Assembly: GCA_047495785.1 (NCBI GenBank)
Contig: JBLDXI010000020.1
Location: 1,054,001-1,118,000 of the forward strand
Direction of reading: 5' to 3'
Origin: Lepidodermella squamata
Taxonomy: Eukaryota; Animalia; Gastrotricha
DNA: 64,000 nt
The first letter of the stretch is position 1, and each line of letters opens with the position of its first letter. Below the pieces are notes generated by a model that worked only from the letters and a program-made list of their open reading frames with translations, was not told the DNA's origin and did not search any database. Below, one piece after another: positions 27,796-36,700 of this stretch. The position numbers and the translations under genes were made by a program.

Positions 27796-30189
27796 ATGCA
27801 GTTCCTCAACCTTCTGCCGATTTTCGCTGCTGTTTCAGCTACTTCTCTGAATGTAACGGAGCCGGTCACTTTGAGATTACAACTCATGTATGCTATAACC
27901 GGCGCGTTTGTCAAATTCGAGGACACGCCGGCAACGGCCCAACTGGTCGCGAGCTTGATCAACAATCGATCAGACATTTTACCTGGCTACCGGCTGGAAA
28001 TGGCATTCGGCGATGAGTCGGCCTCTTCTAGCAAAGCTGTTTCAGCTGCGATTGCTTTTGCATATGAGATGGAGCCTAATAACTCCTCAATAATTCCGTC
28101 TCCGATAATTATTGGCGGTGGAGCTTCGGCGGCTTGTAAAGCTCTAGGCGCCTCCCTGCCTTATTTCGACTACATCGCGTTATCAACGGGTTGTATAGCG
28201 GATGTTTCGACGGGTAGGAATCGGTACCCTAACCTGTTTCTATCAGCCGGTGTTTCATCTTCGAAAAACTACGGCATTCTTAGATTTTTCCGGGAAATCG
28301 GTAAATGGAAACGTTTTGCTATTCTAGTTTTCGCCCAGTCAGCGAATGAAGCTTTCATGGAAGCGAACCATCTTTACAACTCAGCCATTGAACTTAAAAT
28401 GGAGGTTCCGTGGTTCAATGCAGTGATGAACTTCGATTCTGAAGCAGCAATTTCTTTAAAAAGTAGCGGCATTCGCATAGTTTACGTTGCCGCCGTTAGC
28501 AGAAGCTTTGCAGTCATGTTTTTCTGTCAGACCTACCTGGCTGGGATGACGGGGGAAAGATTCGTTTTCGTAACAGGAGACAACGTATTCTTAGATCTGC
28601 CGACAATACCTGAAAATTCCTTACCCTTTGGGTGTACTAAGGCTATGATATACTCGCAATTCAAATCAACGTTTTGGATCGGAATCCTCGACGGATCGCA
28701 AACTCCGGATGCAAAATCATTCCTTGGCTATAATCAAGTTGAATTCGACCATTTACTTTTCGATTTTAAAAATTCAACCAAGAAAGGCCCAGATTTCGAT
28801 TACAGGTACTTGGTTCATGACGTGGTTCTGATAGCTGCCCTGACCCTCAACTCGGCCGATCAAATTTTATCCAGCAGGAACATGTCTTTAAAAGATTTCA
28901 AAACCCGGTCAAATTCTGTCATGGCAGCGACCCGATCTGCTTTTAGAAAAATTGATTTCGCTGGTTTAAGGAATTCTAGGATCAGGTACGACGAAAATGG
29001 ATCTTTCTACGGAATGCTCATCTACATCAACTACTGGCAGCCAATCGGTGGCTTTAACAAGGTAATGGCAATTGAAATGGCTGAAAACAGTTCAAATTCG
29101 CAAATTTACGACAGCTATCTAATCAGGCTATTAGTTGATAAAATTCCGTGGCTCAACGCCGATGGGAAACCTCCGATCGATGGCGCCTTTCGAGTTAAAA
29201 TTGTCCACGGCCATATTTTCGACTCTCGAATTTCATTCGGGCTGATTAGTCTTACTCTTACGATTATTCAAATTTTGGGCCTGATTGCGACCTGTTTCGT
29301 CCGCTCGAGCAGTCAGAAATTCGCGATGACTCATCCGCACATAAAATGTCTGGGCATTTTCGGGTGTTTATTCTTGAATTTAGGATCTTTCCTATGTGTA
29401 ACAATCAGCGAAACCTATCCAGCTGTTATACTGGGAAGTTTCATATCAGGTTTGACTTTGATTTCATGGGCGACTACGATCAGAATTTCCATCGCTAAAT
29501 TGGTTATTCCGTCCGAAATTCGCGGCTACAGCTCGAGAATTTCTCATTATTTGTTCCGCAGTGTGAAACGAAGCAAGAAAAGGAACGAAGACGCCGAAGG
29601 AAGGGCAGGGCGAAGCGTCGAGGCGGAATTAGAAATTTGTTTGGACATTCTCACCAGTCAAATAAAACACGACATTATCCTAGCTGGTCGAGACAGCTTC
29701 GTACTAATGTCAATTTTCGTAATAGGTCACATCGCCGTCCTAATTGCGTGGTTGATCAAAGTTCCATTTGATTGCATCTCAGAGCCCTACTCGCCTGATG
29801 AATATCTCGAGCAAACAGACACGTGGCTGGAACACGTCGTCATAGAGTGCATGTCTTACGATCATGTCGTATGGACTGTTTCGCTTCTCGTCTTTCATGC
29901 CACTCTTCACGTTATTGTCGGATTTTCGGTCGTTCTATTCCGGCTGTCACGCCGATACCGTCTTTGCCCAGAGTTCAACCACAATGCTTGCCTGATACTT
30001 AATGCTATGGCAACCTATTTGATAGCTCTATTTTCGCTGCTTATCTTGAAAAATCCGTTGATGCGGCTTCAGGTTGTGGCCGCTCTCGGCCTACTTTTTT
30101 CAGCCTTATCAAGTGCTGCTTGGATTCAGCCGACCATCTCTTTGATTCGGAAACACAGAAATCAGGCCGCAATCGTGGATTACTCTTGA
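27796..30189 (+). CDS. Intronless GABA-B-like class C GPCR, paralog 4 (most divergent)
   Basis: Signal peptide; INNRSDILPGYRL, RNRYPNLF, FFCQTYLAGMTGERFVF, W..GKPPIDG, 7 TM segments. Confidence 0.88.
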   Translation: MQFLNLLPIFAAVSATSLNVTEPVTLRLQLMYAITGAFVKFEDTPATAQLVASLINNRSDILPGYRLEMAFGDESASSSKAVSAAIAFAYEMEPNNSSIIPSPIIIGGGASAACKALGASLPYFDYIALSTGCIADVSTGRNRYPNLFLSAGVSSSKNYGILRFFREIGKWKRFAILVFAQSANEAFMEANHLYNSAIELKMEVPWFNAVMNFDSEAAISLKSSGIRIVYVAAVSRSFAVMFFCQTYLAGMTGERFVFVTGDNVFLDLPTIPENSLPFGCTKAMIYSQFKSTFWIGILDGSQTPDAKSFLGYNQVEFDHLLFDFKNSTKKGPDFDYRYLVHDVVLIAALTLNSADQILSSRNMSLKDFKTRSNSVMAATRSAFRKIDFAGLRNSRIRYDENGSFYGMLIYINYWQPIGGFNKVMAIEMAENSSNSQIYDSYLIRLLVDKIPWLNADGKPPIDGAFRVKIVHGHIFDSRISFGLISLTLTIIQILGLIATCFVRSSSQKFAMTHPHIKCLGIFGCLFLNLGSFLCVTISETYPAVILGSFISGLTLISWATTIRISIAKLVIPSEIRGYSSRISHYLFRSVKRSKKRNEDAEGRAGRSVEAELEICLDILTSQIKHDIILAGRDSFVLMSIFVIGHIAVLIAWLIKVPFDCISEPYSPDEYLEQTDTWLEHVVIECMSYDHVVWTVSLLVFHATLHVIVGFSVVLFRLSRRYRLCPEFNHNACLILNAMATYLIALFSLLILKNPLMRLQVVAALGLLFSALSSAAWIQPTISLIRKHRNQAAIVDYS

Positions 30190-30840
30190 AATCCAAGTTA
30201 ACTTCAGGAATGACCCACGAGCTTGGAGCGATCTTGAAATTTCAGGAAATGTAATTGCTGATTCAGCCAAGAATTCGGTATCAGGTTGTTGCTCAATGAG
30301 GCATTATGCGATTTTTGTCAAAAAGCCAATTTCAAGCTACGGAAGTCGGCAATACCTCGCTGAAATTAGGGTAGATTTTCTACAATATGATTGAATTTTG
30401 GAGATTTATTCCTGATCTTTGGCGATCGAAAACATTTAGCGGGATTAAAATTTGACAATTGGCGGGTAACTTTGGACGCTCATTTACGTTCGGAATTTCA
30501 TTTTGAGTTTTCAGTGTTTATTGACTTAATTTCGGAAACAAAAATTGACAAGGGGCGTATCATCTGTTTTTCGAATAAATTTAGAACAATACATTTTGCG
30601 CAGCCGCAGTTTTTCAAAATCAAAAATTTGCCTTAACTTCAGGTGAGTTCCTTGCAAAAACCAATCTTTTATTCTTCTGCTTTCATTATACTCCTGTTTT
30701 GCAGGTCAAAGGTCACACGTGCACACGTGATCAAAACGTGTGATCAAAACACTAAACTTTTAGGTTGTTGCTAGTGTGGTAGTTTCGTCGTTTCGTCATT
30801 TCGTCATTTCGTCACCATGAAAAAAAAATATAAAAAAAAT

Positions 30841-30910
30841 GTTGTGAGCTGGAGTCGAACTATCGACCTCTGGTTTCCTGAGCTATAGCTTGTACCACTA
30901 AACCACACAG
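30841..30910 (-). ncRNA. Degenerate tRNA-like sequence (A box + B box + oligo-T), left arm of the foldback element
   Basis: Minus strand: TGGTTTAGTGG (A box) ... ACCAG AGGTC GATAG TTCGACT CCAGC (B box/T arm), followed by T-runs. Stems are imperfect, so probably not a functional tRNA. Confidence 0.6.
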
Positions 30911-31000
30911 GAGACACATGGGATCCGTCTTAGAATCAATTGATATAGGCCACAGTTAAAGCATACTTCAACAAGATAGATGCACACGATTTTAAGACAA

Positions 31001-31080
31001 CTTGCTTGCTTAGTGGTTCCAGCACTAGCACTCGAAACCAGAGGTTGATAGTTCGACTCCAGCTCATATCATTTTTTTTA
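31001..31080 (+). ncRNA. Degenerate tRNA-like sequence (A box + B box + oligo-T), right arm of the foldback element
   Basis: TGCTTAGTGG (A box), D-stem GCT/AGC, loop with TCG at the anticodon position, AGGTT, GTTCGACTCC at 31051-31060, then T8. Confidence 0.6.
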
Positions 31081-31830
31081 TTTTTTCTAAGTTTTTTCGG
31101 TCTTTTGAAAGTTTTTCAAAGTGACGAATTGACGAAATGACGAAATGACGAAACCACCACCAACTTAACAACAAGCAACAACTTAAACGTTTAGTGTTTT
31201 GATCACACATTTTGATCACGTGTGCACGTGTGACCTTTGACCTGCATAACAGGAGTATAATGTTCTTCCGATAACTGAGAGAGACTGAGAGACCCTATGG
31301 GAATATCCAATGCCAATTTCCGTCCCAAAATTTTCTTTTGTTCGGGAAATTGAAAGGAGGTCCCAAATCGTCCCAAATAAATTGCGCTATAATATTTCTC
31401 AAAAATCAATTATTGATCCAAATTGGAACTTAAACCATTCGAAAGCTCAACAGACGGGCAATTTTATAAAACAAATCGTGTGTTTTTTCATTTGGTGTTA
31501 CAAAGCCATCATCCACCTGAAAGCCGAAGTGTCCTAAGTTAACCTGTCCAAATGTCTCTGCGTTCCGGTGTTCATTGATCAAATCAGACAACTAGTTGTA
31601 AATTCCGCCAGAGGTGGGGTGAGATTGGATGAGATTGATATGTAAGGTGCGAAGCTGAAGCAGATGTTCATCGTTGCCAGGCGTGAAGCATGTCGTGTCA
31701 GAAAACTATCAGGATGTTAACATCTGTGCTAGGGAAAGGTATACAGCCAGATTGTTGTGTCCAATTTTAAATAAATTTTTCACTTCATTTTCAAGACTTC
31801 TGATCTGATGACACTTTGAGTGGTCAAACC

Positions 31831-33018
31831 ATGCGATTTTTGTTGAGTTTTGTTTTATTTACCGCTCACGTTGTAGCGTTAATTGTTGCGTCTCGATCTC
31901 CTACTACTACTTCAACCTCATGCAGTCCTGCCGTTGTTTCAAGTTCACTATGGATGACCTGTGCTCCGCCTGAAATTCGCCGCCGGCCTATTTTATCGCT
32001 AGCTATACCGGGCTCTCATGATTCATTCGCGTACTGGCTCGACGACAACCCGAACCTTGAGTTAGCTCCGGATATTTCCAGCTGGCAGATTCATCTCCTT
32101 TCAATCTGGTCGTTGTTCTGGGGCCGCCAGGAACTCAGATCGATGCTGCGAGGCTGGTCTCTCACCCAAACCATGGACATAACCAGCCAACTACGCCACG
32201 GCATTCGATATTTCGACATTCGTGTCGCCTACGACCCAACTAGTGATCAGCTGAGATTTGTCCACTTGCTGTGGGGCCTACCGGTGTACCCAGAGTTGGA
32301 GAAACTAAACGCATTCCTAATAGCTAACCCACGCGAAATTGTTCTGCTTGACTTCAACCATTTGTACGACATGGAACCCGAACAACACGTCCAGTTTGCC
32401 AAGTATTTAGTCAAGCTCTTCGGGCCGAACAGGCTGGTTTCTTTTCGACGCTGGGGCAGATTAAGCTGGCTCACATTGGCTAGATTACAGCAATACAACC
32501 AGCAAGTTATAGTAATCTATCACGACCCGGAAGGTGTTCATGCTTCGGGCAGCAAATTTTGGCCGCAAGGAGCTGCGCATAGCCCGTGGCCTGATACAGA
32601 TCAGCTTGGAAATTTGATGGGTTTTCTCGACAAGGTAGGAGAAAATTTCGAAAAAATCCTCCTTAAAAATCCCAATTTTTTTCAGCAATATCAAAACCGC
32701 ACCGAGCCGTTTCACAATTTCTTTGTCTATCAAGGCGTTTTAACTCCAAGCGCGTCACTCGTGGCTGGAAAATCCGGCCGTGGAAGCCTTCGCTCTGATG
32801 TCGCCGAACTTGCAACGCCAGCTTTCACGACGTGGATTCGCGTCAACCTCGGCGGCGATGTTGCGTCGCTGCCTCAAGTTGTCCGGCGTCGAAAAAAGTC
32901 GAACTTCTCGCTGCGGCGCGATGCCAGCCACGATAAGTTGGCTATTTGCATAGCTGATTTTGTTGAAATAGCAAATTTTACGCAAACTGTTATTCAAATG
33001 AATTATGCGTTTCGGTGA
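31831..33018 (+). CDS. PI-PLC X-domain-containing protein (PLCXD-like) with N-terminal signal/anchor; probable 51-nt in-frame intron 32635-32685
   Basis: LAIPGSHDS, WSLTQ...I.SQL..GIRYFDIRV, RFVH, EIVLLDFNH, C-terminal ICIADFV. Confidence 0.9.
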   Translation: MRFLLSFVLFTAHVVALIVASRSPTTTSTSCSPAVVSSSLWMTCAPPEIRRRPILSLAIPGSHDSFAYWLDDNPNLELAPDISSWQIHLLSIWSLFWGRQELRSMLRGWSLTQTMDITSQLRHGIRYFDIRVAYDPTSDQLRFVHLLWGLPVYPELEKLNAFLIANPREIVLLDFNHLYDMEPEQHVQFAKYLVKLFGPNRLVSFRRWGRLSWLTLARLQQYNQQVIVIYHDPEGVHASGSKFWPQGAAHSPWPDTDQLGNLMGFLDKVGENFEKILLKNPNFFQQYQNRTEPFHNFFVYQGVLTPSASLVAGKSGRGSLRSDVAELATPAFTTWIRVNLGGDVASLPQVVRRRKKSNFSLRRDASHDKLAICIADFVEIANFTQTVIQMNYAFR

Positions 33019-33710: not shown

Positions 33711-36700
33711 TCATTTCAAATAATAGAAGAAGGACCACCTTAAATAGAAATCTTTTGTAAAAATAGACTAAAAATGAGGCAAACTTTACCAGTAGACGAC
33801 GCTGAATAAAGTGAATGACAGTGGAAAGACAAGTCGGCTGAAAACGTCGACGCTCGCCGCCGATATGTACGTGAGCAGGCTATGCAGCGTGTTGAAGCGC
33901 CGGCAGCAGCGGCACCACGAAAACGGCGGCCTAATTCCAGCCTAAAAATAAATAGAAAAAAACCGTAAAATTCCAGGAAAAAAATTAGTACACAAATTGT
34001 GAGTTTCTACTGCCCGAGAGAGATTCGAAAAAATCATTCAATTGCTCGCGTTTTTACTAGTACCAAAGCATTTGAACCCACGACATCGAATCGTTTTAAT
34101 ATTTCGGGTGTGCTTTCTAAAAAAGCGAAAACTATGTAACGAAGCAAAGAAAAATTTCCGTAAAATCACTCGGCTATTCAACGAAATATTGAAGCCAGCA
34201 TTAAATATTCGGGTTAAATAGCTCACCCTTAAATAAGCCTGTGAAATTGAAGTAATTATCATCAATTTTTTCACAAAATTCGTGTCGCCTGTAAATAGGT
34301 AATATTTTAGTGGACTCAATTAATTACCTCTTTATAGGTATCGGGTAGACATTGCCAGTACTCGCCGACTTCTTTATCGTGTGATGCGCATTCGCGTTCG
34401 ATGCAGAACAAAAAGTGAACCATAGCGTACTCGATAAGGGAGAGCGCGGCGAATACAAGGCAGGCGAATGACCAAATGTCCCACGCTTTGATGTAGCCGA
34501 CGGGTGGCAAATTGCCCGCCGCTGTTTCTTTGATGTTAGTCAGCGTTAGCACGGTGAGCAGGCCGAGTTGCACGCGCGCCTGCGTCGCGTCCGGGTGGAA
34601 CCAGAAGCTGATCCACGACAGGATAACCATGAGACCGCTCGGAATGTACAGGCGAATAACGTACAGCTTGAGCTTTCGCTCTAGTAACATTTCGAGCTTC
34701 AAACACGGGTAAAGACCGGTCAGATACTGCTGTTCGCATTTTCCGAAAGTCAATCCTATAAACAAAATCAAATTTTTCAAAAAAATGGGTCAATGGTGCG
34801 ATTTTTTATCGACTTATTCACAAAGTTTTGAATGACCTAGAGCTATTCAATGATATGAATAGATTGCGCCAAGGTCTCTTAGCTACGTACATATATACTG
34901 AGGTGTTATTAGTAAATTTTCTAGAAAATGTACACTTTTTCAGCCAAAGTATGATTATACAAATTTATCGCTGTTAGGAAGCCTTAAAATGGAGCGATAT
35001 CAGCGAAATATTATCCTTAATGAGAAAATACTACGGAAGTATCTCGTCCTATCGCCAACAGTCATCAAAGTGATGGAGATGGACCGACTTTTCCCAGAGA
35101 GTTTCGTCGCAAGGCTCAAGGCAATTCATTTTTTCCCTAATTTTTTCAAAAATTAATTGTCAATTTTTTACAGAATTTGAGGCCGATCGATCAAAATGCA
35201 TTCATGATCGATTTCGTCGTAAATTTTCCCGGGGTAGAAGCGTATGAGAACTTCATTTTCCTGCTTCGAAAAACGTCCCAGTCATGGTTGAGTGAAATCA
35301 TCGAATCCGGGAAAGCAGTCGATAATTTCATGCATTTCCGACCCGATGAAGCAATGGCGCCTGGTTCTTACCAATTACAGCCGTATCAAAACAGCACAAC
35401 CGGGTTCGACCCATTATTTCAGCAAATTTCCGGCGATGTCGGCGGCATGTATGAATTTCTAAGCGGCGCGAATCAAGGCTACGGCGCTGATAATTTGACA
35501 GCTCTAGTCCCAGCAGGCGGCTCTGACGGGTCGTTGATGACCCGCGGGGTTGTCGATTTAGTCCGCGAGTGCCGCCAGCGGCAAATCAACGCCGAGCAGA
35601 GGCTGGCCCACTTACAACGCGAGCAAATGGCGCTGAAGCATCGCATCGCGGAAAATCAACGCGAGCAAGCGGCGGTTCAAGCCGCGAAGGCCTCCTTAGC
35701 CCAACTAGCGACAAGTGCGGATCGCGTGACGAAACAAGCCCGGCAAACTGAGATAGCCACCTCAATTGCCGGGGCTGCTTTACCACCCGCTGCCCTACCG
35801 CTGCCGATACCTAGGGCCCCGTCGCGGGTGCCACCTGCCCTCCCCTCGCCGCACGCAGCGCACTACCGAAGCGTGCCGACTCGTCTGGGAATTTTGCGTG
35901 AAACTGGGTCGAAATTTCACCACTCTAATTTACCGATGCCGATGACAAGTAAGCTAACTTTAGACGAATTAGCCCGCATCGGGTGATGCTGTGTTGTGGT
36001 GTAGATTTTTAGTGCGCATACCTTTCATTTTGTACTGCTGGACCTCGCTGCCGTCACCGCTATCCATCCACTGTTTGGTCCATCGTGACTGAGCGGCAGC
36101 CCATGCAAATGTCATCATCTCGTTTGTGTGACCGACTGCGAGTTTTTATAGTAATTAAACACGCGAAAATTTACAATAAAAAATGACTTACAGCTTTCCA
36201 ACAAGACCGGGCAGTTTTGAGTGTCAAATCTTGAAAAACACATTTTTAAGGTGAATTAAATTAAAAAATCCGATAAATTACGGGTATTTCCACAGGTTCA
36301 TTTGGCAAGAGAATGAAGCAGTCAATTTCATGTCGTACCTTTAGTTTAAAAAAATTGAAATTTTTTTGAAAACCTTCAAGTCAAAACTTACACAACCGTG
36401 CCGTTTCGAGACACTGTCATGACACGATTGGGCCTGGTAATATCATGGAACGAGGCGGCTTTTTCATTCCGAAAAAAGACGTCCGGCGTCCACATTCTGT
36501 CCCAAGTTCCGTCCTCGAGACGGAATTCAGGTGGACCTTTTTGCCTAGCGAAAATTTTCGCTATCCTCCCATCGACCCAAGTTTGACGCAGGAAAAACGA
36601 CATTGAAATTTCCTGTGTAGAAATTAATTCAGGTAAATTGCATTTTTATTAGGAATTCTAACCATTGTAGCTTCATTTATTGCTTGGATGCGTTCGATCT

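What the first reader, a model, noticed from the sequence alone, without database searches (positions are those of the whole stretch)
30684..31262. Foldback transposon whose two arms each contain an outward-facing tRNA-derived Pol III cassette
Seen: a ~580-bp imperfect palindrome. Each arm has, from outside in, a TIR with CACGTG/TGATCA repeats, a (TTTCGTCA)n array, an oligo-T tract and a tRNA-like unit with A and B boxes. The two units are head-to-head across a ~90-bp non-palindromic spacer. B-box regions are nearly identical between arms while acceptor and anticodon stems have decayed. Known: tRNA-derived promoters typify SINEs rather than TIR elements, and B boxes recruit TFIIIC and can act as chromatin insulators. 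Inference: a SINE/MITE chimera that could spread Pol III small-RNA units or insulators, here between a GPCR and a PLCXD gene.
Basis: partly seen in the sequence, partly recalled or inferred. Interest (0 to 1): 0.75.

Follow-up and report, generated by a model that had tools for sequence, protein, structure and literature searches.

The report
Jumping DNA element carrying tRNA-like units
This is a young, roughly 25-copy, non-coding cut-and-paste transposon whose two long inverted arms each hold a worn-down tRNA-gene-like promoter unit; that cargo is unusual, but nothing shows it is active.

Summary
It is not a local duplication. The genome holds at least 16 full-length copies, 1.2-4% from their consensus, and about 49 matching ends. 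Termini are sharp (CATTATAC...GTATAATG) and most copies have a 2-bp target-site duplication (TT here).

It is a MITE with long foldback-like arms, not a SINE. CA..TG ends, 2-5 bp duplications and subterminal 8-bp arrays fit the CACTA-Mirage-Chapaev(-Transib) clade. Coding elements of 2.2-3.2 kb in the same genome share its ends and array but lack the tRNA-like unit.

Each arm's unit keeps tRNA-gene geometry: A box, a 33-nt gap, B box, 11 nt, then a run of eight T. It meets 15-16 of 18 invariant tRNA positions. The cloverleaf is gone: 10-12 of 21 stem pairs, no ARAGORN or Rfam tRNA match, and folding no better than shuffled sequence.

The unit occurs only in this family and its close relatives, so it looks like a DNA-level capture. 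Copies decay evenly along their length, which argues against host selection on them. Pol III or TFIIIC activity is plausible but untested. This is a new MITE family with unusual cargo, of modest interest.

The parts
30682..30683 (.). Left copy of the 2-bp target-site duplication (TT)
   Evidence: 11 of 14 distinct full-length copies have matching 2-bp flanks of variable sequence.
30684..30775 (+). Left outer terminal inverted repeat. It starts CATTATAC and contains CACACGTG x2 and GTGATCAAAAC x2.
   Evidence: I1, 95% complementary to 31171-31262.
30783..30814 (+). Left subterminal array, TTTCGTCA x4
   Evidence: The same array lies near the end of the coding relative (L034:1030-1100).
30820..30839 (-). 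Oligo-T tract read on the - strand (T8 at 30832-30839). It is terminator-like and directly follows position 73 of the left unit.
30840..30912 (-). Left tRNA-like unit, 73 nt. A box 30895-30905, B box 30851-30861.
   Evidence: 16/18 invariant positions, 10/21 stem pairs. No tRNA call.
30913..30998 (.). 86-bp largely non-palindromic spacer between the 5' ends of the two units
   Evidence: Shared by all copies.
30999..31071 (+). Right tRNA-like unit, 73 nt. A box 31006-31016, B box 31050-31060.
   Evidence: 15/18 invariant positions, 12/21 stem pairs. No tRNA call.
31072..31121 (+). T-rich tract: T8 at 31072-31079, then further T-runs. It includes about 25 nt that the left arm lacks.
31122..31153 (+). 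Right subterminal array, TGACGAAA x4
31171..31262 (+). Right outer terminal inverted repeat, ending GTATAATG
31263..31264 (.). Right copy of the 2-bp target-site duplication (TT)

Best explanation
The stretch is one copy of a young, non-autonomous cut-and-paste DNA transposon: a 579-bp MITE with about 240-bp foldback-like arms. It most likely belongs to the CACTA-Mirage-Chapaev(-Transib) clade. Shown: sharp CA..TG termini, mostly 2-bp target-site duplications, about 25 dispersed loci and no coding capacity. Its terminal 20-33 nt and its subterminal TTTCGTCA array are shared with 2.2-3.2 kb protein-coding elements in the same genome. Inferred: a transposase from those relatives binds the ends and arrays and moves the MITE in trans. 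Inside each arm sits a 73-nt module that most likely descends from a tRNA gene captured as DNA together with its terminator. It was then copied into the other arm by the inverted duplication that made the palindrome. The modules keep the Pol III type-2 promoter layout (A box, B box, T-run) but have lost the cloverleaf. They cannot make a working tRNA. At most they would recruit TFIIIC/Pol III and give short outward transcripts ending before the arrays. Whether they do so is not shown.
For: Mobility: at least 16 full-length copies at 86-97% identity to the window copy. 49 ends lie within 3 mismatches of the 33-nt terminus, against 0 in the control. Insertion boundaries are exact and 11 of 14 distinct copies have 2-bp duplications; one has 3 bp and one has 5 bp. 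Copies are 1.2-4.2% from the consensus.

Clade: CMCT elements share CA..TG termini and 2-5 bp duplications (PMC12730594). CACTA-type MITEs with 2-bp duplications are described (PMC6004678).

Partners: related TIRs pair at 3,127 bp (C33), 3,205 bp (C29) and 2,158 bp (C73). The C73 element's end in L034 has 30/33 TIR identity and the same array. Its 107-aa ORF has paralogs inside the other CATTAT-ended elements. Two more distant paralogs lie about 0.6 kb upstream, on the same strand, of two of the genome's only four Transposase_21 matches.

tRNA origin: the A box - 33 nt - B box - 11 nt - T8 layout fits a gapless 73-nt tRNA numbering, with 15-16 of 18 invariant positions. This geometry is absent from shuffles and nearly absent from other held DNA.

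Acquired cargo: the 29-nt T-arm core occurs 44 times in the genome, all inside this family or its close relatives. It is absent from the coding relative's end and from a 235-bp sister MITE.
Against: No intact autonomous partner was read. The C33 copy's first exon matches in two overlapping pieces, which suggests a frameshift. The Transposase_21 link is indirect and weak (21-22 bits, below the cut-off, in distant paralogs only). RAG1 and DDE_Tnp_4 profiles do not hit these elements.

The tRNA reading rests on motifs and spacing. The Rfam tRNA model gives no match at E <= 10 even in 96-101-nt searches. ARAGORN finds nothing at normal thresholds. Only 10-12 of 21 stem pairs are standard, and folding energy equals that of shuffles. 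No source tRNA could be named.
Confidence: 0.75

Rival explanations
1. Same MITE, but the A-box and B-box resemblance is coincidental. On this reading the conserved 33-nt core is simply part of the long arms. It might be a binding site for the transposase or a host factor, or it might be kept alike by arm-to-arm homogenisation. It would have nothing to do with tRNA or Pol III.
For: There is no tRNA call by ARAGORN or Rfam. The cloverleaf is essentially random at 10-12 of 21 pairs. No matching tRNA or SINE exists elsewhere in the genome within 3 mismatches of the 29-mer. The core is conserved about as well as the TIR and the array (91% vs 89.5% and 91%), as expected for a cis-acting transposition signal.
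Against: Two separate motifs, their 33-nt spacing, the 11-nt distance to a T8 run and 15-16 of 18 invariant positions all fall in one gapless tRNA register. No shuffle reproduced this. The coding relatives and the sister MITEs with the same ends lack the core, so it is not needed for transposition.
Confidence: 0.2
2. The modules are active and maintained. On this reading the transposon lineage keeps a divergent pair of Pol III/TFIIIC units because they help it, for example as a chromatin boundary against silencing or as a source of small RNAs. It would thereby seed the genome with extra TFIIIC sites.
For: All promoter-critical positions and the terminators are intact in both arms of nearly all copies. 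The B-box region is as conserved as the TIRs across diverged subfamilies, while the stems and upstream parts are not. Both arm types persist through subfamily splits.
Against: Within the young family, substitutions are spread evenly (1.8-2.6% in every segment except the homopolymer linker), so inserted copies show no constraint. The relatives compared are few and not independent. Sister families transpose without the module. No expression or binding data exist.
Confidence: 0.2
3. It is a SINE-type retroposon or a single local inverted duplication of a tRNA pseudogene, not a DNA transposon.
For: It has an internal Pol III-like promoter. Several truncated copies break at the oligo-A/T tract.
Against: It has long TIRs with exact boundaries, 2-bp duplications, no 3' tail and about 25 dispersed loci that carry both arms. 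The truncated pieces are outer arms or include upstream spacer, so they are not unit-length transcripts.
Confidence: 0.02

Closest known systems
CACTA/Mirage-type (CMC, CMCT clade) non-autonomous elements and MITEs
   Same: CA..TG termini, 2-bp (range 2-5 bp) target-site duplications and short subterminal repeats in inverted arrays near both ends. Small, non-coding and multi-copy, with longer coding relatives in the same genome (PMC12730594; PMC6004678).
   Different: The termini read CATTAT rather than the usual CAC. The arms are complementary over about 240 bp. The internal part is a tRNA-like module pair. The transposase link is only indirect.
MER6/MER6A composite MITE of mammals (a Tc1/mariner MITE carrying a V-SINE fragment; PMC6887750)
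   Same: A DNA-transposon MITE that spreads a sequence of Pol III-element origin by cut-and-paste. It is a composite built from two unrelated sources.
   Different: MER6 holds a SINE body that lost its tRNA-related head, in one copy, and has TA duplications. Here only the tRNA-like promoter part plus terminator is present, twice and inverted, in a different superfamily.
tRNA-derived SINEs (including dimeric ones such as Twin of Culex; cited from my own knowledge, not checked here)
   Same: A degenerate tRNA-related region that keeps A and B boxes while the cloverleaf erodes.
   Different: SINEs have no TIRs. They end in a LINE-related or A-rich tail, make long variable duplications and move through RNA. 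None of that is seen here.
Foldback (FB) elements of Drosophila and similar long-inverted-repeat elements
   Same: Almost the whole element is two long inverted arms that contain short tandem repeats, so it can snap back into a hairpin.
   Different: FB arms are long, variable arrays of tandem repeats with longer duplications (from my own knowledge). Here the arrays are only 32 bp, copies are uniform in length and the duplication is 2 bp.

Membership tests
MITE (miniature inverted-repeat transposable element) | Short (<~800 bp) and without coding capacity | tested here: met
   579 bp. The only ORFs inside are trivial ones of 51 aa or less.
MITE (miniature inverted-repeat transposable element) | Terminal inverted repeats and target-site duplications at exact boundaries | tested here: met
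   11 of 14 distinct copies have matching 2-bp flanks; chance is 1/16 per copy.
MITE (miniature inverted-repeat transposable element) | Multi-copy, homogeneous family | tested here: met
   At least 16 full-length copies and 49 ends. Copies are 1.2-4.2% from the consensus.
CMC / CMCT clade (CACTA-Mirage-Chapaev-Transib) | 5'-CA..TG-3' termini and 2-5 bp target-site duplications | tested here: met
   criterion from PMC12730594.
CMC / CMCT clade (CACTA-Mirage-Chapaev-Transib) | Autonomous partner encoding a CMC-type DDE transposase | tested here: inconclusive
   The ORF of the CATTAT-ended coding relatives has distant paralogs 0.6 kb upstream of sub-threshold Transposase_21 matches. The 3.1-3.2 kb elements themselves could not be read. 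The RAG1 profile finds nothing.
PIF/Harbinger-ISL2EU (the other group with 2-bp duplications) | DDE_Tnp_4-type transposase in the partner element | tested here: not met
   None of the 57 PF13359 matches in the genome lies in a CATTAT-ended element.
SINE | Internal Pol III promoter (A and B boxes) in a tRNA-related head | tested here: met
   At motif level only.
SINE | No TIRs; a 3' tail; long variable duplications from LINE-mediated retroposition | tested here: not met
   92-nt outer TIRs, no tail and 2-bp duplications.
tRNA gene / tRNA pseudogene | Cloverleaf recognised by tRNA finders or a covariance model | tested here: not met
   ARAGORN finds none; only odd calls appear at 80% thresholds. 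Rfam RF00005 gives no match at E <= 10. 10-12 of 21 stem pairs are standard.
tRNA gene / tRNA pseudogene | Invariant positions, A/B-box spacing and a terminator after position 73 | tested here: met
   15-16 of 18 invariant positions, a 33-nt gap and a T8 run starting at position 74.
Drosophila-type Foldback elements | Arms built mainly of long tandem-repeat arrays, variable length, longer duplications | tested here: not met
   The arrays are 4 x 8 bp, length is uniform and the duplication is 2 bp. The criterion is from my own knowledge.
Active Pol III transcription unit / TFIIIC site | Occupancy by TFIIIC/Pol III or unit-length transcripts | not testable with these tools
   No expression or ChIP data were available.

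The most novel reading that the evidence does not exclude
A cut-and-paste DNA transposon lineage has captured a tRNA gene, duplicated it into a divergent pair, and keeps only its Pol III/TFIIIC-recruiting parts. On this reading each new insertion plants a pair of TFIIIC sites (possible boundary elements or small-RNA units). This would be a DNA-transposon counterpart of the way tRNA-derived SINEs spread such sites.
Probability: 0.2. Interest if true: 0.6.

Novelty: new variant of a known kind. Interest (0 to 1): 0.38.

Why it matters
If the units bind TFIIIC or Pol III, this family would show that tRNA-type promoters and possible boundary elements can be spread by DNA transposition as well as by retroposition. 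It would also give a young, nearly uniform set of about 25 insertions for testing effects on neighbouring genes. If they are inert, it is simply a clear example of a MITE built from transposon ends plus captured host DNA. It also helps annotate a poorly described CA..TG, 2-bp-duplication transposon group in this animal.

Tried and rejected
Single-copy inverted duplication: rejected.

SINE or retroposon: rejected.

Functional tRNA: rejected.

Rfam MIR2630 match (47 bits against a 144-bit threshold): a generic long-hairpin hit, not a family match.

An abundant SINE or tRNA gene as recent donor of the unit: none within 3 mismatches of the 29-mer.

PIF/Harbinger-ISL2EU partner: no DDE_Tnp_4 match in the related elements.

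RAG1 Pfam profile: no match anywhere in the genome.

The partner's 107-aa ORF gave no Pfam family, nothing useful in the ESM Atlas and only 2 weak hits among 1.8 billion proteins; one of those is an ADAR-like protein and probably spurious. The DUF7833 matches are weak and only served to show collinearity.

A metagenome scan for the 25-nt core found nothing.

Literature searches found no MITE described with paired tRNA-like A/B-box units. The nearest precedent is MER6.

The organism stays unidentified, and Repbase/Dfam could not be queried.

Full report
**What is there.** Window 30684-31262 is a 579-bp imperfect palindrome. The repeat finder gives three collinear arm segments:
- 30684-30775 / 31171-31262: 92 nt, 95% complementary.
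- 30776-30824 / 31112-31160: 49 nt, 90% complementary.
- 30825-30901 / 31010-31086: 77 nt, 86% complementary.

As single-stranded DNA the element folds into one long hairpin (-208 kcal/mol, z = -33). TRF confirms CACACGTG x2 near each end. It also confirms a four-copy TTTCGTCA array at 30783-30814, mirrored by TGACGAAA at 31122-31153. Inward of each array lies an oligo-A/T tract and then a 73-nt unit. The left unit is 30840-30912 on the minus strand and the right unit is 30999-31071 on the plus strand. Their 5' ends face each other across an 86-bp spacer.

**It is a mobile family, not a local duplication.**
- A search of the window's own 121-Mb genome returned at least 16 full-length copies at 86-97% identity to the window copy, plus many fragments.
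- The 33-nt terminus occurs 49 times within 3 mismatches, against 0 for the reversed control.
- All full copies start CATTATAC and end GTATAATG, with unrelated flanks.
- In 11 of the 14 distinct copies, the two bases before the element equal the two after it (TT, AA, AA, CA, AA, TT, TA, TA, AT, AT, GA). One copy has a 3-bp duplication, one has 5 bp, and one has a damaged end. The window copy is flanked by TT (30682-30683 and 31263-31264).
- Copies lie 1.2-4.2% from their consensus; the window copy is at 1.7%. The burst was therefore recent.
- The element has no meaningful ORF.

These are the defining features of a MITE.

**The asymmetry is old and fixed.** The two arms differ in four ways: the spacer, about 25 extra nt in the right T-rich tract, and the 5' halves and acceptor parts of the two units. 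These differences are the same in every copy. Both arm types persist in diverged subfamilies (L015/L016 at 7%, L017 at 11%, and others). They were features of the master element, not decay of individual copies.

**Which kind of transposon.** The CMCT clade (CACTA/EnSpm, Mirage, Chapaev, Transib and allies) is described as sharing CA..TG termini and 2-5 bp duplications (PMC12730594). CACTA-type MITEs with 2-bp duplications are on record (PMC6004678).

A relaxed search with the first 20 nt found 117 ends, against 9 in the control. They include:
- other MITE families of about 525-550 bp;
- pairs 3,127 bp apart (C33), 3,205 bp apart (C29) and 2,158 bp apart (C73).

I hold the right 1.19 kb of the C73 element (L034:1-1187). 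Its terminus matches the MITE's at 30 of 33 positions. It has the same TTTCGTCA/TTTCGTTA array at the same distance from the end. It has no tRNA-like unit, and it carries minus-strand ORFs beginning about 390 bp from the end.

The first ORF (107 aa) has paralogs inside the C33 and C29 elements. Further paralogs lie on C2, C4, C24, C16 and C11 within a few kb of a CATTAT-type end; another, on C66, had no such end among the places one search listed. Two more distant paralogs (C42:256729, C1:927530) lie about 0.6 kb upstream, on the same strand, of two of only four Transposase_21 (CACTA TNP2-type) matches in the genome. Weak DUF7833-like matches show that the C4 and C66 elements place the C-terminal piece 1.9 kb downstream of the N-terminal one, against 0.55 kb in C73. 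Full-length elements would therefore encode a protein of at least about 670 aa, and C73 is a deletion derivative.

DDE_Tnp_4 (PIF/Harbinger-ISL2EU, the other group with 2-bp duplications) does not hit these elements. The RAG1 profile finds nothing in the genome.

Earlier notes of this scan (s1-365904, s1-421954, s1-407478) describe 3.2-3.6 kb two-gene elements in this genome with CAT..ATG ends, 2-bp duplications and a RAG1-fold transposase assigned to the CMC/Transib group. That agrees with my reading, but I could not link their sequences to mine.

I therefore assign the MITE to the CMCT clade with about 70% confidence. An intact partner was not demonstrated. The C33 copy's first exon matches in two overlapping pieces, which suggests a frameshift.

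**Are the units tRNA-derived?**

Against:
- ARAGORN finds no tRNA in the window or in any of the 40 loci. It gives only an aberrant call when thresholds are cut to 80%.
- The Rfam tRNA model gives no match at E <= 10, even when only 96-101 nt are searched.
- As RNA the units fold no better than shuffles (z -0.4 and -0.6) and not as cloverleaves.
- Only 10-12 of 21 canonical stem pairs are standard; I estimate about 8 would be by chance.

For:
- Laid out without gaps on a 73-nt tRNA numbering, the units meet 15 and 16 of 18 invariant or semi-invariant positions: U8, A14, R15, G18, G19, R37, Y48, G53, T54, T55, C56, R57, A58, Y60 and C61 in both, plus Y32 in the left unit. A21 and U33 fail in both.
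- The A-box-like motif is followed by exactly 33 nt, then the B-box-like motif, then 11 nt, then a run of eight T starting at position 74.
- A composite scan used A box with at most 2 mismatches, a 28-45 nt gap, B box with at most 1 mismatch and T5 within 7-16 nt. In 626 kb (both strands) it hit only element copies plus one other site. It hit nothing in 20 shuffles.

The T-run immediately after position 73 is what a tRNA gene with its own terminator looks like. It is not what a SINE head looks like.

I conclude, at about 75-80%, that the unit descends from a tRNA gene or pseudogene taken up as DNA, and that only the promoter-relevant positions have survived. No isotype can be named.

**The unit is cargo, not part of the transposition machinery.** The 29-nt T-arm core occurs 44 times in the genome within 3 mismatches. 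Every hit is inside this family or its close relatives. The coding relative's end, a 235-bp sister MITE (L034:4880-5115) and the other MITE families with related TIRs all lack it.

Among diverged arms the T-arm/B-box segment is as conserved (91%) as the TIR (89.5%) and the array (91%). It is more conserved than the anticodon arm (75%), the D arm (76%) and the upstream part (47%). That is suggestive, but it rests on few, related lineages.

Within the young family, substitution density is flat at 1.8-2.6% in all segments. Only the homopolymer linker is higher, at 5.7%. Inserted copies therefore drift neutrally.

**How it most likely works.**
- Shown: it is a non-autonomous element that inserts with 2-bp duplications.
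- Inferred: a CMC-type transposase from the roughly 3-kb relatives recognises the CATTAT termini and the subterminal arrays and moves it in trans.
- Inferred: the palindrome arose by inverted duplication of one end plus adjacent captured DNA.
- Possible but untested: each unit recruits TFIIIC and Pol III and yields a non-tRNA RNA of about 75 nt that ends at the T-run, before the arrays.

The two RNAs would be alike in sense, not complementary. Read-through by Pol II from a host gene would give a hairpin with a stem of about 240 bp, as for many MITEs.

**Context.** The copy lies between two plus-strand ORFs. The upstream ORF (27796-30189) has an ANF_receptor domain. The downstream ORF (31816-33018) has only a weak, sub-threshold PI-PLC-X match.

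**Comparison with known elements and novelty.** The closest known kinds are CACTA/Mirage-type MITEs, which match in ends, duplication and arrays. MER6 is also close: it is a mariner MITE that spread a V-SINE fragment lacking its tRNA-related head (PMC6887750). Five full-text literature searches found no MITE described with a divergent pair of tRNA-like A/B-box units. The library is partial, and Repbase and Dfam could not be queried.

I rate this a new MITE family with an unusual variant of cargo. Interest is modest unless Pol III or TFIIIC activity is shown.

Noticed in passing
G000 C1:1.03-1.33 Mb, C3:1.52-1.87 Mb, C15:1.62-2.88 Mb, C19:0.09-0.85 Mb: Dozens of 72-nt tRNA genes with identical Rfam scores (37 at 74.8 bits, 25 at 72.5 bits) lie scattered at irregular 2-70 kb spacing. 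The first-look screen flagged 14,660 tRNA-like candidates. This may be large dispersed tRNA gene families or a tRNA-carrying repeat.
   Followed up: no
L029:3374-6288 (G000 C3:3320373-3323287): One copy of the MITE is split by an insert of about 2.35 kb at element positions 61-69. Those 9 bases are duplicated on both sides, which suggests a nested insertion of another transposon with a 9-bp duplication.
   Followed up: partly
L034:4880-5115 (G000 C73): A MITE of about 235 bp has the same kind of ends and a TGACGAAA x4 array but no tRNA-like units. It is a sister lineage or a deletion derivative.
   Followed up: partly
G000 C2:1964197-1964734, C7:1386740-1387277, C10:1177334-1177869, C34:518578-519115; C31:1905459-1906008, C34:679139-679663: At least two further MITE families of about 525-550 bp have related CATTAT-type termini. 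One of these terminus types also lies 2.7 kb from an ORF paralog on C4 (end at 1169850-1169869, ORF at 1166895-1167188).
   Followed up: no
L034:474-794 (-) and paralogs: The N-terminal exon of the putative transposase of the CATTAT-ended elements has about 20 paralogs in this genome. It has only two weak matches among 1.8 billion representative proteins.
   Followed up: partly
L015/L016 (G000 C66:128221-128762 and 131248-131789); L025/L026 (C4:655460 and C10:1690100): Two MITE copies sit in a 3,027-bp tandem duplication. A truncated copy is shared, with its flanks, by segments on two contigs at about 90% identity, which points to a segmental duplication or diverged haplotypes.
   Followed up: no
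L024:4947-5092, L025:4961-5104, L027:4923-5102, L040:4958-5062: Several truncated copies break exactly at the oligo-A/T tract between the array and the tRNA-like unit. The tract may be a hotspot for breakage or template switching.
   Followed up: no
window 34316-34780 (-): An ORF with a neurotransmitter-gated ion-channel transmembrane region (Neur_chan_memb, E 7e-22) lies downstream of the PI-PLC-X-like ORF.
   Followed up: no
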